IMG/VR virus record: IMGVR_UViG_3300028676_000003
Span: 1 to 64,000 of that record
Reading direction: 5' to 3' (one strand)
DNA: 64,000 nucleotides
Below are positions 33,900-49,755 of the stretch, in pieces. Under the pieces are notes generated by a model. The model saw only the letters and a list, made by a program, of their open reading frames with translations, did not search any database and was not told the DNA's origin. Made by a program: the position numbers and the translations under genes. How positions within the stretch are numbered: position 1 is the stretch's first letter; each line of letters begins with the position of its first letter.

Positions 33900-33940
33900 A
33901 CACATTTGTGTACATTCGCTGGCTCATGGCCTTCGGCACA
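33900..33940. repeat. bipartite repeat copy (ACACATTTGTGTACAT + ATGGCCTTCGGCACA)
   Basis: Both halves recur at 34328-34343 and 34361-34375. Confidence 0.8.
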
Positions 33941-33953
33941 TAACAAATCCATA

Positions 33954-34271
33954 ATGAATAATAACCACATACAGAAAAATCATATACAAATGAATAAAGC
34001 TATATACGAAATAATCCAAAGACTAGAAATGTCTTATCATCCAATCCTTGGAACAACATATAATCTTATAGAGATAACACAAGAAAAAGACTACTCAGAA
34101 TCCGAAGGACCAACCTTTGAATATAATAATTCTATGAGACATATCCTCTCCCGTGTAAAAGAAATCCAAGAGGTAAAAGAATGCTCACATGGTAAGTCTT
34201 CCATACAAATGATAGGCAATAGAAGCTACTGCGACATATGCCAAAAATACGTCTATAACGCCATAGACTAA
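33954..34271 (+). CDS. hypothetical protein with possible C-terminal Zn ribbon
   Basis: ECSHG...YCDICQK. Confidence 0.6.
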   Translation: MNNNHIQKNHIQMNKAIYEIIQRLEMSYHPILGTTYNLIEITQEKDYSESEGPTFEYNNSMRHILSRVKEIQEVKECSHGKSSIQMIGNRSYCDICQKYVYNAID

Positions 34272-34279
34272 CACATAGA

Positions 34280-34830
34280 TATACCCTAAATGTGGCAACG
34301 CCCATGGCGTGTGCAACACTGCCATGTACACATTTGTGTACATCCATGTCCGAGCCATGTATGGCCTTCGGCACACGGACTCCACGGCTCTCATAGAAGC
34401 CGTTTACGGCATTAATATGTTCCAAATGGTACATAGGTTAGCACGTAGCTATTTTAGGGCTAATTTGGGCTTAATTTCGCTAGGGTGGTAAAAAGTGGTA
34501 TTTTGTGTCGTTTTTAGGTACATAAATTGGAAAATGCTTTTAGGGTACATATATGCATATAGAAATACCTCCAATAAAACCTCCAATAAATCGGTTGTCT
34601 TCGTGTATTCGAAGGCGTTTTTGGCTGAGATTTTTCAGATACGGGCATAGTACACCCCTTATGTACACAAATGTGTCATTTGGCTTCGGTTGAGGTCGGT
34701 TTGTTGTATGCTTCGCCCGTGGCCCGAATAAATCTATATAGAAATTCTATATGAATCTATTTGACATAGGGAATCTGCATCGGACAAGTCCAACAACGTG
34801 ATTTTCGATAAGGCGTTTTTAAAAAGGATT
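34280..34830. other. GC-richer non-coding island with palindromes and repeats
   Basis: ATGTACACA-TT-TGTGTACAT palindrome 34324-34343; inverted 16-mer copy 34661-34676; ACCTCCAATAAA tandem; AAGGCGTTTTT twice. Confidence 0.6.
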
Positions 34831-34899
34831 TACATAGGCATGGTTTTTAGGTACAACAAAAAATCCCCAAACTACAATCGAGTTTGAGGTCTTGTTAAG

Positions 34900-34915
34900 T
34901 GTTCCACGTGGAACA
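34900..34915. promoter_or_regulatory. parS: parS-like centromere palindrome
   Basis: TGTTCCACGTGGAACA, intergenic, identical to 26513-26528. Confidence 0.75.
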
Positions 34916-35058
34916 ACTAGGTCACACACTACTATTATGCATAGCGTATCGTTAAAGTACAAAGGTACGACAAATATTTCTAATAAAAAACTTGTATATG
35001 AATTATTTTTGTTGTATCTTTGCAAACTTTTTTATTTTGTTGAGATTACTTCTAGCTA

Positions 35059-35090
35059 CAAAGGTACGAAATATAAATGAGACTACCAAA
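35059..35090 (-). promoter_or_regulatory. leftward Bacteroidota-type promoter
   Basis: Minus-strand TTTG (35087-35090), 20-nt spacer, TACCTTTG (35059-35066). Confidence 0.7.
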
Positions 35091-35100
35091 AAAATTCGTT

Positions 35101-35119
35101 ATTTAGACTCAGTCTAAAT
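35101..35119. promoter_or_regulatory. 9-1-9 palindrome, Fur-box-like
   Basis: ATTTAGACT-C-AGTCTAAAT. Confidence 0.45.
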
Positions 35120-35127
35120 GTTAACTT

Positions 35128-35190
35128 TGTCGTAGGACGGAGTCTACTCTTCCACCCATTACGGCACGCCCTTGTTTGTATTTTTCAACG
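35128..35190 (-). ncRNA. putative small RNA, GTAGACTCC family copy a
   Basis: Minus-strand TATCTTTA box at 35194-35201; no ORF; GTAG-ACTCCGTC-CTAC hairpin. Confidence 0.5.
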
Positions 35191-35296
35191 GTGTAAAGAT
35201 AGGAAAAAGATTTTGAATAAAAAAATAAAAATCCAGGTATTTTCTAAAAAGTTTTATATATCTTTGCCTTATCAGAAACCAACTAAATAAAATGAT

Positions 35297-35653
35297 ATGA
35301 AAAAGTTAAGTGAATTATATAGTATATTATTAGAGGACTTTAAAAACCGCAATAAACAAATCGATGAGACAGACGGTATATATATGGGTGTAAGTGAATA
35401 TAGCTTTTTATGTAACTGTTTAAAGCAATTACATAAAGAAGGAATTTTCAACGATGATGAGTTTGCGTATTTATATTCTCACTTTATATTACAGAAACCA
35501 AGTAGAACCGTAAATACTGCTTTTTATGACCATGAGTTATATGATGGAGATTATGTTTGGTTTAAGACGCTATGTTATAGTAAAGAAGCTTTTGCGTTAC
35601 GAGTTCAATTATTAACAAACATCATTTCTAAATTAAAAGAGGAATCTAAATAA
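35297..35653 (+). CDS. hypothetical protein
   Basis: After promoter box 35259-35266. Confidence 0.7.
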   Translation: MKKLSELYSILLEDFKNRNKQIDETDGIYMGVSEYSFLCNCLKQLHKEGIFNDDEFAYLYSHFILQKPSRTVNTAFYDHELYDGDYVWFKTLCYSKEAFALRVQLLTNIISKLKEESK

Positions 35654-35659
35654 ATCTAT

Positions 35660-35992
35660 ATGAATAAATCAGAACTCCTAGCGAAATTAAGTTCACAAAT
35701 AAGTGAACCGCTAACATATTGTAACGTAAACGATTTTGAAGAGGAAAAACATTTTTTGTTTAATATTGGTCGTGCGTTAATTTGGGTTATCCAAGAAAAT
35801 GGAATTGTAACAAAAGTATTAGATTCTGTTGAAATGGGTTATGATGGTTGGTTATACGATAACTATACGGAAGAGAATGAGAAGCTTGTTAATAATTCTG
35901 TTGTAAAGATAGAGATTCATAAAGGCGATGTTAGGATATTGAATTCTAAAGCCAATATAGAATTATTCAACGAATTGGTAAAATATCTTTAA
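35660..35992 (+). CDS. hypothetical protein
   Basis: Starts within the TAAATAAATCTATATG junction repeat. Confidence 0.7.
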   Translation: MNKSELLAKLSSQISEPLTYCNVNDFEEEKHFLFNIGRALIWVIQENGIVTKVLDSVEMGYDGWLYDNYTEENEKLVNNSVVKIEIHKGDVRILNSKANIELFNELVKYL

Positions 35993-36056
35993 AAAGATTT
36001 GGTAGTATGGATTTAATTTCTTAGATTTGTCCTATCAATTAAAACACATAGAAATT

Positions 36057-48260: not shown

Positions 48261-48320
48261 AATTAGGTTATATCATTTAAATGTTTTATATTTGTCCTAT
48301 CAATTTAAAACATATACACT

Positions 48321-48800
48321 ATGAGTAATTTAGGCTTAATTCCAGTAAGAAACTTCGGTATACTAGACGAAGTAAAAGGATTGTATCGTTCAGCACAACC
48401 AATGTATGGTTATGAGTATGAATGGTTAAAAAACGTTCTTAATGTTAAAACGATAGTTAATCTACGTTCAGAATCAAATCACGATACAAACGTTGCTGTT
48501 AAGCACGGGATTAATGTAATCAACTTTCTAGTTGAAGACCATAAGTCGCCAAGCCAAGAGCAAGTTGCAGAATTTGTGAGAGTTATTCAAAACGACGACC
48601 ATTATCCTTTGTTGTTCCATTGTCAACATGGACATGGTAGAACATCAACATTTTGTGTGTTGGCTCGTATGGCTACGGGTTGGAGCTTTGAAGACGCTAT
48701 CAAAGAAGAGAATGAAGTTTTTCATTATCAATTTAGATATCAGGTACAAAAAGACTTTTTAGAAAATATTTCAACAAAAAGTTTGGTAGTCTCAGAATAA
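48321..48800 (+). CDS. Cys-dependent (dual-specificity/tyrosine) phosphatase
   Basis: LYRSAQP, TIVNLR and LFHCQHGHGRT (HCx5R). Confidence 0.85.
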   Translation: MSNLGLIPVRNFGILDEVKGLYRSAQPMYGYEYEWLKNVLNVKTIVNLRSESNHDTNVAVKHGINVINFLVEDHKSPSQEQVAEFVRVIQNDDHYPLLFHCQHGHGRTSTFCVLARMATGWSFEDAIKEENEVFHYQFRYQVQKDFLENISTKSLVVSE

Positions 48801-48821
48801 AGTATTACCTTTGTAAGGTAG

Positions 48822-48898
48822 AATTGAGATTGATAAGATGACGGAAAATACGTCTAGGGGTGCAGTCGCCTGTAGACTATTATCAATCTCAATTTTTT
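48822..48898 (+). ncRNA. putative structured small RNA
   Basis: Perfect 15-bp stem AATTGAGATTGATAA/TTATCAATCTCAATT just after promoter box 48806-48813. Confidence 0.5.
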
Positions 48899-48943
48899 AA
48901 AAATATAACGGTTCTGTTGAGGTCCGTCTAAAAACCCAAACTG

Positions 48944-49036
48944 GACCATATAGCTTAATTAGTTCAATAGCTAAGAACAAGGTAAAAGCATCCTGCTCTA
49001 AACAGGGAAATGGGGGTTCAAGTCCCTTTATGGTTA
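48944..49036 (+). tRNA. amber suppressor tRNA (anticodon CUA) with 20-nt D-loop insertion
   Basis: Acceptor GACCATA/TATGGTT, D stem GCTT/AAGC, anticodon arm TCCTG-CTCTAAA-CAGGG, T arm GGGGG-TTCAAGT-CCCTT; no encoded CCA. Confidence 0.75.
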
Positions 49037-49102
49037 CGAAAAGTTTTAGGTGTATCTATAAACCTACAGTTTATGTGGACTGTAAAACTGCTAAGCAAAT
49101 AG

Positions 49103-49183
49103 AAACCGTTAGCTCAGTTGGTTAGAGCGTTGGTCTGGGGTTGCTCATTCCAAAGGTCGTAGGTTCGAGTCCTGCACGGTGGA
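49103..49183 (+). tRNA. tRNA-like element with 14-nt anticodon loop (Pro-GGG-like/pseudo)
   Basis: Canonical D arm AGCTCAGTTGGTTAGAGC and T arm GTAGGTTCGAGTCCTGC; loop CTGGGGTTGCTCAT; mismatched top of acceptor stem. Confidence 0.6.
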
Positions 49184-49186
49184 CAA

Positions 49187-49263
49187 AGATTAAGTATAGT
49201 GTACAACGGCTTGACTCAGACTCAAGTAGGAGTTTTAGGGTGTCCGATTCCCTTTTTAATCTC
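49187..49263 (+). tRNA. degenerate tRNA-Leu(CAG)-like element
   Basis: AGATTAA/TTAATCT acceptor and CTTGA-CTCAGAC-TCAAG arm; weak D and T arms. Confidence 0.4.
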
Positions 49264-49321
49264 TAGTGTCATAGGTTGCAAACTGTGATACGAAACATTT
49301 CGAAATGCTCCCGTAAGGGAA

Positions 49322-49421
49322 AGCCGTATAGTATTAAAGAAAGAATTCCCTCGAAAGAATTCTAAATGCATCTGAACTCGTCTTGGGTTCTTAGTTGTGG
49401 GTGCGAATCCCGCTACGGCTA
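49322..49421 (+). tRNA. tRNA-like element with D-loop hairpin insertion and abnormal anticodon arm
   Basis: AGCCGTA/TACGGCT acceptor, GTGGG-TGCGAAT-CCCGC T arm, AGAATTC/GAATTCT insert. Confidence 0.5.
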
Positions 49422-49566
49422 CAAATAATCTCAATGAAGACTGCCCAGTGCAGGGCAGGGATAGTTGAGGTTGTCTAGTAAGCTGATTATGTAGCCGACG
49501 GGTGAAGTAAGAGGTATTACGAACTTATTCGAATAAGCAAAAAACTTTACGGGTGCAATGCCCTAG

Positions 49567-49639
49567 CTAGTGTAGCTCAGTTGGTTAGAGCATGTGTCTG
49601 AGAACACAAGGTCGTTGGTTCGAGTCCAATCGCTAGTAC
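49567..49639 (+). tRNA. tRNA with 6-nt anticodon loop (CUGAGA; pseudo or atypical)
   Basis: GCTAGTG/CGCTAGT acceptor, canonical D and T arms, TGTGT-CTGAGA-ACACA. Confidence 0.65.
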
Positions 49640-49695
49640 AAATTTTTTGCATGGCTTGCAAATCTATTGTGTGTATGGGATTGGTTCTCCCTTTG

Positions 49696-49726
49696 AATGG
49701 CTACTCTTAACGGAGTAGCCATTTTT
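49696..49726 (+). terminator. intrinsic terminator closing the RNA cluster
   Basis: AATGGCTACTC-TTAACG-GAGTAGCCATT followed by a T run. Confidence 0.85.
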
Positions 49727-49739
49727 ATGCCTTGTAGAT

Positions 49740-49755
49740 ACACATTTGTGTACAT
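49740..49755. repeat. ACACATTTGTGTACAT copy
   Basis: Identical to 33900, 34328 and (inverted) 34661. Confidence 0.8.

What the first reader, a model, noticed from the sequence alone, without database searches (positions are those of the whole stretch)
33900..49755. Four copies of the quasi-palindromic 16-mer ACACATTTGTGTACAT at block boundaries
Seen: copies at 33900, 34328 (within the perfect ATGTACACA-TT-TGTGTACAT), 34661 (inverted) and 49740. The first two are followed by ATGGCCTTCGGCACA (33926, 34361). They sit at the end of the array, in the GC island and just after the RNA-cluster terminator. Inference: an operator or binding site for a dimeric protein, such as an initiator, terminase or domain organiser.
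Basis: partly seen in the sequence, partly recalled or inferred. Interest (0 to 1): 0.6.

Follow-up and report, generated by a model that had tools for sequence, protein, structure and literature searches.

The report
Conserved palindromic protein-binding site, jumbo phage
The repeated 16-mer is real: it is the core of a 20-bp palindrome kept at the same few intergenic places in a clade of uncultured ~350-kb T4-like phages, and it most likely binds a dimeric DNA-binding protein that is not yet identified.

Summary
ACACATTTGTGTACAT occurs exactly at 33900(+), 34328(+), 34661(-) and 49740(+). A fifth copy lies at 358971(+) of the 368.5-kb circularly assembled phage genome, and there are none elsewhere.

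It is the core of a 20-bp palindrome, ATGTACAC-WWWW-GTGTACAT. Searches anchored on neighbouring proteins find it at three orthologous intergenic positions in a clade of uncultured T4-like jumbo phages:
- two or three copies bracketing a non-coding module with repeats, upstream of a GP88-like gene;
- one copy between a sigma-factor operon and a 132-aa gene;
- one copy just past a tRNA cluster.

Across 47 unique sites the centre is always A/T. Outer-arm changes are not compensatory. The element can sit in either orientation at the same place. These features fit two inverted half-sites bound by a protein dimer. They do not fit an RNA hairpin, a terminator or a promoter.

The 20-mer is essentially absent from 185,579 bacterial genomes, so the binder is probably phage-encoded. 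The weak candidate is the 132-aa protein next to one copy, whose model resembles XRE/Cro-type HTH domains at Z 4-5.7 only.

No binding was shown. What the site controls is inferred, not demonstrated. I rate it a new member of a known kind, of moderate interest.

The parts
33900..33915 (+). Motif copy 1. The left outer arm is degenerate (ACGC instead of ATGT). It lies at the end of the small-ORF array, 38 nt before the ATG of a 105-aa ORF.
33926..33940 (+). 15-mer ATGGCCTTCGGCACA, first copy, 10 nt after motif copy 1. Specific to this genome.
34324..34343 (.). Motif copy 2, the full 20-bp palindrome ATGTACACATTTGTGTACAT.
34361..34375 (+). 15-mer ATGGCCTTCGGCACA, second copy, 17 nt after motif copy 2.
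34428..34551 (+). Three direct repeats of the half-site-like octamer GGTACATA (34428, 34517, 34544), between copies 2 and 3. They are 3 of the 16 occurrences in the genome.
34485..34501 (+). GGTGGTAAAAAGTGGTA iteron-like repeat. Similar (A)AAAGTGGTAAAA repeats stand at the same place in relatives (L043, L044, L091).
34567..34590 (+). Tandem direct repeat ACCTCCAATAAA x2. Relatives have other short tandem repeats at this place.
34661..34680 (-). Motif copy 3, inverted. The exact 16-mer is at 34661-34676 on the minus strand. With copy 2 it brackets the 317-bp repeat-bearing segment.
34900..34915 (.). Perfect palindrome TGTTCCACGTGGAACA, a neighbouring element that is not the motif. A second exact copy is at 26513-26528. 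The CCACGTGG core is kept in relatives at this place.
48961..49638 (+). tRNA cluster: three Rfam tRNA matches, at 48961-49036, 49103-49183 and 49566-49638.
49699..49727 (+). Hairpin GGCTACTC...GAGTAGCC plus T-run after the tRNA cluster. Read by eye; the scan did not list it.
   Evidence: sequence; not flagged
49740..49755 (+). Motif copy 4. It lies between the tRNA-cluster hairpin and the terminator of the convergent minus-strand gene 49864-50124.
49820..49840 (-). Terminator-like hairpin of the convergent minus-strand gene.

Best explanation
The 16-mer is the core of a 20-bp palindromic DNA site with consensus ATGTACAC-WWWW-GTGTACAT. It consists of two inverted GTGTACAT half-sites around a 4-bp A/T spacer. 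I infer that a sequence-specific DNA-binding protein dimer, most probably phage-encoded, binds it. The phage keeps a handful of such sites at fixed intergenic places in its host-RNAP-transcribed early region. (B) Two or three copies bracket a ~320-440-bp non-coding module that carries iteron-like and half-site-like direct repeats, upstream of the GP88-like early block. (A) One copy lies between the operon of a phage sigma factor and a conserved 132-aa gene, 21-34 nt upstream of that gene's GATATTTAT-type promoter-like box. (C) One copy lies in the spacer after a tRNA cluster. The likely action is that of an operator or boundary site. The bound dimer would control transcription entering or leaving these junctions. 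At B it would, possibly by looping between the paired sites, control the repeat-bearing module, which looks like a replication origin or regulatory hub. Shown: the sites, their palindromic consensus, and their conservation and positions in relatives. Inferred: protein binding, the dimer, and what is regulated. The 132-aa neighbour with an XRE/Cro-like model is only a candidate binder (about 1 in 3).
For: 1. Five exact copies and no degenerate family in 368.5 kb.
2. An IMG/VR scan finds the 16-mer in 64 loci. Many contigs hold 2-5 copies with unrelated flanks, and most of these loci share proteins and gene order with this genome.
3. Tests anchored on proteins, and so free of motif ascertainment: 11 of 12 loci encoding a homologue of the 132-aa protein carry the motif 50-70 nt upstream of it. 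One more genome has a perfect 20-bp palindrome there. Of 22 loci with a GP88-like protein at 54% identity or more, 17 carry 1-3 copies within 4 kb upstream. None of 23 loci below 50% identity does.
4. Among 47 unique sites the 4-bp centre is always A/T (ATTT 29, TTTT 11, AATT 6, GTTT 1). Inner arms are constant. Outer-arm changes are almost all uncompensated, for example 14 mismatches against 1 compensatory pair at arm position 3.
5. Orientation relative to local genes is 36 co-directional, 11 opposite and 12 unclear. In two close relatives with collinear flanks the element is flipped in place (L075 against L076).
6. Only one chance-level hit to the 20-mer in 185,579 bacterial and archaeal genomes, so it is not a host regulon motif or a prophage of known genomes.
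7. Between copies 2 and 3 lie three direct GGTACATA repeats, 3 of 16 in the genome. Relatives keep iteron-like repeats between their paired copies.
8. The 132-aa neighbour models at pLDDT 73. Its residues 46-132 match mostly XRE, Cro/CI, C-protein and Aca HTH domains (Z 4-5.7).
Against: - No binding data of any kind.
- No canonical HTH_3 or HTH_17 gene and no ParB_N gene was found in the genome.
- The XRE-like assignment of the 132-aa protein rests on low Z-scores only. Pfam and PDB sequence searches give nothing.
- Homologues of that gene in G001, G010, G011 and G012 lack the motif upstream. G011 keeps motif copies only near GP88.
- Spacing between the motif and the promoter-like box varies from 21 to 34 nt, so it is not a fixed-phase activator site.
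- The centre is asymmetric (ATTT) in most copies and is co-oriented with genes about 3:1. A purely symmetric operator does not explain this.
- In two relatives the palindrome forms the top of a GC-clamped hairpin followed by a T-run (L051, L077).
Confidence: 0.6

Rival explanations
1. The site is a target or landing place of homing endonucleases, or a recombination or gene-conversion hotspot like the PeSL cassettes of T4-like phages. On this reading the copies are kept identical by cutting and repair or by recombination, and they mark places where modules are exchanged.
For: HNH endonuclease genes of two subfamilies lie within about 100 nt of a copy in at least 7 relatives, in all three regions. 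In L042 two inverted copies flank one such gene. In L019, L043 and L044 the HNH ORF reads through the motif. The element is flipped in place between close relatives. Gene content between sites varies strongly: 14-24 kb between regions A and B in relatives against 43.5 kb here. PeSLs show that repeated intergenic cassettes mediate shuffling in T4-like phages (PMC2839356, PMC4122927).
Against: This genome keeps five perfect copies, yet its only HNH gene of that family lies about 80 kb from the nearest copy. The sites are intact beside HNH genes, which is unexpected for a cleaved target. Positions are orthologous and stable rather than scattered. HNH genes may simply prefer intergenic junctions. 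This reading would explain why HNH genes sit there, not why the palindrome itself is conserved.
Confidence: 0.13
2. The site is a promoter recognised in one direction by a phage sigma factor or by an undetected phage RNA polymerase, possibly as a DNA hairpin as with the N4 virion polymerase. It would drive short non-coding or primer RNAs and the first genes of blocks.
For: Few copies with near-invariant sequence. A 3:1 co-orientation with genes. The motif contains CACATTTG, close to the Bacteroidetes-type TAnnTTTG box used by this phage's early promoters. In L029 and L009 an ORF starts 7-15 nt after the motif. Two sigma-70-family genes are present, one of them directly upstream of copy 358971.
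Against: Both arms are conserved symmetrically, which a promoter does not need. About a quarter of the sites whose orientation could be called point against the local genes, and the site upstream of the same gene is flipped in L076. The copy after the tRNA cluster points into a convergent gene. Copies 2 and 3 converge on each other. No RNA polymerase family was found, although the control for PF00940 matched nothing anywhere. No -33 element stands at a fixed distance.
Confidence: 0.1
3. The element acts in RNA, as a hairpin for termination, attenuation, processing (for example by RNase III) or 3'-end protection at the ends of transcription units.
For: The full palindrome folds into an 8-bp hairpin at -9 to -10 kcal/mol. 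It lies at operon ends (regions A and C). In L051 and L077 it is extended by GC pairs and followed by a T-run. T-rich stretches follow 6-20 nt downstream in region A. A palindrome works as a hairpin in either orientation.
Against: Arm changes are not compensatory. Copies 33900 and 49740 fold only weakly, at -3.8 and -7.1 kcal/mol, with 5-bp core stems. Most copies lack an adjacent T-run. In region C a canonical terminator already precedes the motif. Exact primary-sequence conservation of the stem is not needed for a hairpin.
Confidence: 0.1
4. Copies 2 and 3 are the inverted repeats of an invertible DNA switch acting on the 317-bp segment between them.
For: Exact 16-bp inverted repeats flank 34344-34660.
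Against: Contigs from independent peat samples bridge both repeats only in the reference arrangement, and no strand-changing joints were reported. In most relatives the paired copies are direct, not inverted. No recombinase was seen next to them.
Confidence: 0.02

Closest known systems
Operators of phage and mobile-element XRE/Cro-type HTH dimers (434 and P22 operators, C-boxes of restriction-modification controller proteins, Aca operators at acr promoters)
   Same: A 14-20-bp inverted repeat with conserved half-sites and a non-contacted A/T-rich centre. There are a few copies per genome, and one copy lies directly upstream of a small gene whose model resembles this HTH fold.
   Different: The sites are spread over about 60 kb rather than clustered at one switch. 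Spacing to the promoter-like box is variable. The HTH assignment is weak and not seen at sequence level. No repressor-type S24 or immunity module was found.
Iteron-plasmid Rep systems, in which Rep monomers bind direct iterons at the origin and Rep dimers bind an inverted-repeat operator built from the same half-site (from general knowledge)
   Same: Full palindromes and three half-site-like direct repeats (GGTACATA) stand together in one non-coding, repeat-rich module, with further palindromes elsewhere.
   Different: No Rep-like gene was identified. The half-site-like repeats were shown only in this genome. T4-like phages are not known to use iteron origins. The origin function is not shown.
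Dispersed centromere palindromes of the plasmid-prophage N15 (sopC sites) and the dispersed C1 operators of P1 (from general knowledge)
   Same: A few copies of one specific site lie scattered at intergenic or promoter places across a large phage genome.
   Different: No ParB/SopB-type gene was found, and there is no evidence that this phage is a plasmid prophage. P1 operators are asymmetric.
PeSL cassettes (stem-loop plus early promoter) of T4-like phages (PMC2839356, PMC4122927)
   Same: This is also a T4-like phage. The motif is an intergenic dyad often followed 20-40 nt later by a promoter-like box, it flanks variable genes including HNH genes, and it may favour shuffling.
   Different: PeSLs are numerous. 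Their stems are GC-rich and variable and act as terminators next to host sigma-70 promoters. Here there are 3-8 copies of one invariant AT-rich 20-mer at orthologous positions, with no compensatory stem changes.

Membership tests
Dimeric-HTH operator (protein-binding inverted repeat) | Two inverted half-sites with conserved bases and a tolerant spacer of fixed length | tested here: met
   47 unique sites have constant ACAC/GTGT inner arms, conservation that decays outward, and a centre that is always 4 bp of A/T.
Dimeric-HTH operator (protein-binding inverted repeat) | Specific binding by a cognate protein | not testable with these tools
   Needs EMSA, DAP-seq or ChIP. The candidate 132-aa protein has only a weak XRE-like fold match, and the homodimer job gave no verdict.
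Dimeric-HTH operator (protein-binding inverted repeat) | Position overlapping or next to a promoter that it controls | tested here: inconclusive
   A GATATTTAT-type box lies 20-40 nt downstream in 13 of 67 contexts, mostly orthologues of one site. Other copies lie between terminators.
Intrinsic terminator / RNA hairpin element | Stem kept by compensatory changes, followed directly by a U-tract | tested here: not met
   Arm changes are uncompensated. A T-run directly follows in only 2 relatives. Hairpin energies here range from -3.8 to -10 kcal/mol.
Promoter (sigma-dependent or phage RNA polymerase) | Fixed orientation toward the transcribed genes and asymmetric conservation | tested here: not met
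   11 of the 47 sites whose orientation could be called are opposite to local genes. An in-place flip occurs upstream of the same gene. Conservation is symmetric.
parS / ParB centromere | A ParB-family protein encoded with the sites, or a match to the host parS consensus | tested here: not met
   No ParB_N in the genome. The motif is unlike TGTTNCACGTGNAACA. A separate element at 26513 and 34900 does match that consensus.
Bacteroidetes LexA (SOS) box | GGA-N5-TCC or CTAA-N5-TTAG palindrome | tested here: not met
   The motifs given in PMC8565304 do not match the 20-mer.
Invertible switch (inverton) | Both orientations of the flanked segment present in populations | tested here: not met
   Only the reference arrangement appears in contigs of four peat runs. 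Contigs can miss rare variants.
PeSL cassette of T4-like phages | A GC-rich terminator stem-loop joined to a host-type early promoter, in many copies in hyperplastic regions | tested here: not met
   An AT-rich invariant palindrome, five copies, and a neighbouring box that is not the host-type TTTG/TAnnTTTG promoter. Features taken from PMC2839356.

The most novel reading that the evidence does not exclude
The palindromes, the half-site-like direct repeats and the iteron-like repeats of the 34.3-34.9-kb module, together with two perfect host-type parS-like palindromes (26513 and 34900), would form a plasmid-like origin, copy-control and partition region in a T4-like jumbo phage. One initiator or regulator would bind direct repeats as a monomer and the dispersed 20-bp palindromes as a dimer (operator or handcuffing sites). 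The phage would borrow the host ParB. That would point to an episomal carrier state for a phage type held to be strictly lytic.
Probability: 0.1. Interest if true: 0.75.

Novelty: new member of a known kind. Interest (0 to 1): 0.42.

Why it matters
Almost nothing is known about how uncultured ~350-kb phages of soil and peat organise their early programme. A nearly invariant 20-bp site at three or four orthologous junctions, specific to one clade, is a concrete handle. It can be used as bait to fish out the regulator and as a marker to recognise this clade. It also points to the repeat-bearing module it brackets, which is a candidate origin or control hub. If the binder proves to be the small XRE-like protein next to the sigma-factor operon, that would link the sigma cascade to a repressor or activator step. 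If the site proves to be an initiator or boundary element, it would be unusual for a T4-like phage.

Tried and rejected
- **Inverton.** Contigs of four peat metagenome runs laid on 33000-36500 show no inverted joint. No RNA run holds the phage, so transcript ends could not be read.
- **Host regulon or prophage.** A scan of 185,579 genomes for ATRTACACATTTGTGTACAT gave one chance-level hit.
- **Bacteroidetes LexA boxes.** They do not match.
- **ParB_N, T7-type and multisubunit RNA polymerase, HTH_3 and HTH_17 families.** No match in the genome. The PF00940 control matched nothing anywhere, so that blank is weak.
- **Rfam.** Nothing in 33.4-35.4 kb. Only three tRNAs in 48.8-49.9 kb, and no tmRNA.
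- **Literature.** A search for the motif string found nothing relevant.
- **INPHARED phages.** No DNA match to 33500-35300. There is no cultured close relative: GP88-like at most 47% identity, portal at most 36.5%.
- **The 132-aa protein.** Pfam, PHROGs and PDB sequence searches found no family. Foldseek gave nothing significant. The Atlas gave only weak HTH hints.
- **Homodimer prediction of the 132-aa protein.** No verdict, so it counts neither for nor against.
- **Co-variation of operator and protein.** Distant homologues of the 132-aa gene carry other palindromes or none upstream, with no clear pattern.
- **ATGGCCTTCGGCACA box.** Present only in this genome, so treated as local.

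
Full report
**1. The observation**

The 16-mer ACACATTTGTGTACAT occurs exactly at 33900(+), 34328(+), 34661(-) and 49740(+). At up to 2 mismatches 0.15 matches are expected, and none of 100 shuffles reached 5. The copy at 34328 lies in the perfect 20-mer ATGTACACATTTGTGTACAT. The first two copies are each followed by ATGGCCTTCGGCACA, after 10 and 17 nt.

The window is the first 64 kb of a 368,549-bp IMG/VR virus record. The two ends of the record overlap by 146 nt at 98% identity, so the assembly is circular or circularly permuted. The whole genome holds one more exact copy, at 358971(+), and no degenerate relatives of the motif. It ties as the most repeated 16-mer of the genome. 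All five copies lie on a ~59-kb arc, about 16% of the genome.

**2. What kind of genome this is**

Portal, large terminase and major head proteins are T4-like. The nearest cultured relatives are a Microcystis phage and a Flavobacterium phage at about 36% identity.

Nearly all genes are on the + strand, and GC content is 29-40%. Genes between 35 and 56 kb are preceded by TTTG-N~19-TAnnTTTG promoters. From general knowledge this is the type used by Bacteroidota RNA polymerase, so I take these to be early genes read by the host enzyme. Many genes from 65 to 360 kb are instead preceded by a (T/A)AGATATTTAT(T/A)A box 5-25 nt before the ATG.

The phage encodes two sigma-70-family proteins, SmpB and 62 tRNAs. 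No RNA polymerase family was detected. The DNA comes from peat metagenomes, and no RNA run holds it.

**3. The motif in relatives**

An exact-match scan of IMG/VR returned 64 loci. Many contigs carry 2-5 copies with unrelated flanks. Most of these loci share proteins and gene order with this genome, and they fall into three orthologous regions:

- **Region A:** SmpB, then the sigma factor, then the motif, then a conserved 132-aa gene. In this genome that copy is at 358971.
- **Region B:** two or three copies, 200-900 bp apart, in a non-coding stretch 0.5-3.5 kb upstream of a GP88-like gene. In the window these are the copies at 33900, 34328 and 34661.
- **Region C:** just after a tRNA cluster and its terminator, often facing the terminator of a convergent gene. 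In the window this is the copy at 49740.

The exact-match scan is biased toward the motif, so I repeated the test from the neighbouring proteins:

- Of 12 loci encoding a homologue of the 132-aa protein, 11 have the motif 50-70 nt upstream of it. A further genome has a perfect ATGTACACAATTGTGTACAT there.
- Of 22 loci with a GP88-like protein at 54% identity or more, 17 have 1-3 copies within 4 kb upstream. None of 23 loci below 50% identity has one.

The element is therefore clade-specific and positionally conserved. Related records are 19-64% complete fragments of genomes of about 350 kb, and each holds 3-8 copies. One complete relative keeps copies only around GP88. The 20-mer is essentially absent from 185,579 bacterial and archaeal genomes, with one chance-level hit.

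**4. Anatomy of the site**

I collected 47 unique sites, seeded only on ACAC-NNNN-GTGT. They give the consensus ATGTACAC-WWWW-GTGTACAT.

- The centre is always A/T: ATTT 29, TTTT 11, AATT 6, GTTT 1.
- Conservation falls off toward the outer arm positions.
- Outer-arm changes are almost never compensated. At arm position 3 there are 14 mismatches against 1 compensatory pair.

This is the pattern of two half-sites read by a protein dimer across a non-contacted spacer. It is not the pattern of a structure-constrained hairpin.

As RNA, the five copies here fold at -3.8 to -10 kcal/mol, and the weakest (33900) has only a 5-bp stem.

Orientation relative to local genes is 36 co-directional, 11 opposite and 12 unclear. 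In two close relatives with collinear flanks the 18-bp element is inverted in place upstream of the same gene (L075 against L076). A promoter, or a terminator that acts in one direction, would not tolerate this.

In region A the distance to the downstream GATATTTAT box varies from 21 to 34 nt. In region C the site lies between two terminators.

**5. Surroundings of the paired copies**

Between copies 2 and 3 lie:

- three direct repeats of GGTACATA, resembling the half-site (3 of the 16 in the genome);
- a GGTGGTAAAAAGTGGTA repeat;
- a tandem ACCTCCAATAAA x2 repeat.

Relatives keep (A)AAAGTGGTAAAA-type repeats, other short tandem repeats and a CCACGTGG palindrome between or next to their paired copies. 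The module looks like a protein-binding hub or a replication origin, but nothing here shows what it does.

Contigs from four peat runs show no inversion of the segment between copies 2 and 3.

**6. Who binds?**

No ParB_N, HTH_3 or HTH_17 gene was found.

The 132-aa protein downstream of the region A copy has no family at sequence level. Its AlphaFold model has a mean pLDDT of 73. Over residues 46-132 it resembles mainly XRE, Cro/CI, C-protein and Aca HTH domains, but only at Z 4-5.7, a range the tool itself calls common. A homodimer job gave no verdict.

More distant homologues of this gene lack the motif upstream. It is a candidate and no more.

**7. HNH genes**

HNH endonuclease genes of two subfamilies sit within about 100 nt of a motif copy in at least seven relatives, across all three regions. 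One is flanked by inverted copies, and three read through the motif. In this genome the only member of that family lies about 80 kb from the nearest copy.

I read this as endonuclease genes exploiting or targeting a conserved multi-copy site. It does not explain why the site itself is conserved. It remains the main rival, and it may also account for the in-place flip and for the sequence identity among copies.

**8. Comparison and verdict**

The site works like an operator for a dimeric HTH protein. The combination of palindromes and half-site-like direct repeats recalls iteron-plasmid Rep systems, and the dispersed copies recall the N15 sopC sites and the P1 C1 operators (both from general knowledge).

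It is not a PeSL cassette as described for T4-like phages (PMC2839356, PMC4122927). It is not a Bacteroidetes LexA box (PMC8565304). It is not a parS site.

The finding is a new member of a known kind. It is moderately interesting because it gives an experimental handle on regulation in an uncultured jumbo-phage clade.

Noticed in passing
window 26513-26528 and 34900-34915: Two exact copies of the perfect palindrome TGTTCCACGTGGAACA, which fits the chromosomal parS consensus TGTTNCACGTGNAACA (consensus from memory). The CCACGTGG core is kept at the same place in relatives L043 and L044. No ParB_N gene is in the phage, so host ParB recruitment is conceivable.
   Followed up: partly
genome 356930-357370 (outside the window; L072:1931-2368): The phage encodes SmpB (Pfam E = 4e-54), conserved in relatives just upstream of the sigma-factor gene. 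Neither ARAGORN nor Rfam finds a tmRNA in the genome or in the 48.8-49.9-kb RNA cluster.
   Followed up: partly
window 48961-49638: RNA cluster. Rfam calls three tRNAs, but ARAGORN accepts only one, and with an abnormal two-base anticodon '(ga)'. The stretches between them (49190-49560) are GC-richer and may hold further structured RNA.
   Followed up: no
window about 12600-33550: A long array of ~60-aa ORFs, many starting ATGAAATTAGG or ATGAAACTAGG (MKLG...). This is a large paralogous family of small early proteins. The segment is much shorter in relatives: 14-24 kb between regions A and B, against 43.5 kb here.
   Followed up: no
genome 357729-358640 and 204519-205346 (outside the window): Two sigma-70-family genes with regions 1.2, 2 and 4. 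A widespread (T/A)AGATATTTAT(T/A)A box lies 5-25 nt before the ATG of many genes from 65 to 360 kb and may be their promoter class. Genes from 35 to 56 kb use the host-type TTTG/TAnnTTTG.
   Followed up: partly
relatives L012, L019, L035, L042, L043, L044, L061; own genome 132694-133389(-): HNH endonuclease genes (phrog_1035-like, two subfamilies) lie within about 100 nt of motif copies in many relatives. In L019, L043 and L044 the ORF reads through the motif and encodes MYTNVY.
   Followed up: partly
genome 228804-228879 (outside the window): A tRNA with anticodon CUA, which would read TAG, among the 62 tRNAs. Possible stop-codon suppression or recoding was not examined.
   Followed up: no
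window 34862-35070, minus strand: Two minus-strand TACCTTTG promoter-like boxes (near 34950 and 35060) point toward a minus-strand terminator at 34889-34865. This suggests short leftward non-coding transcripts across the parS-like palindrome.
   Followed up: no
loci L007, L013, L016, L024, L059: In a set of related small contigs the exact 16-mer lies inside the C-terminal part of the large-terminase homologue. It is coding there and probably unrelated to the intergenic sites.
   Followed up: no
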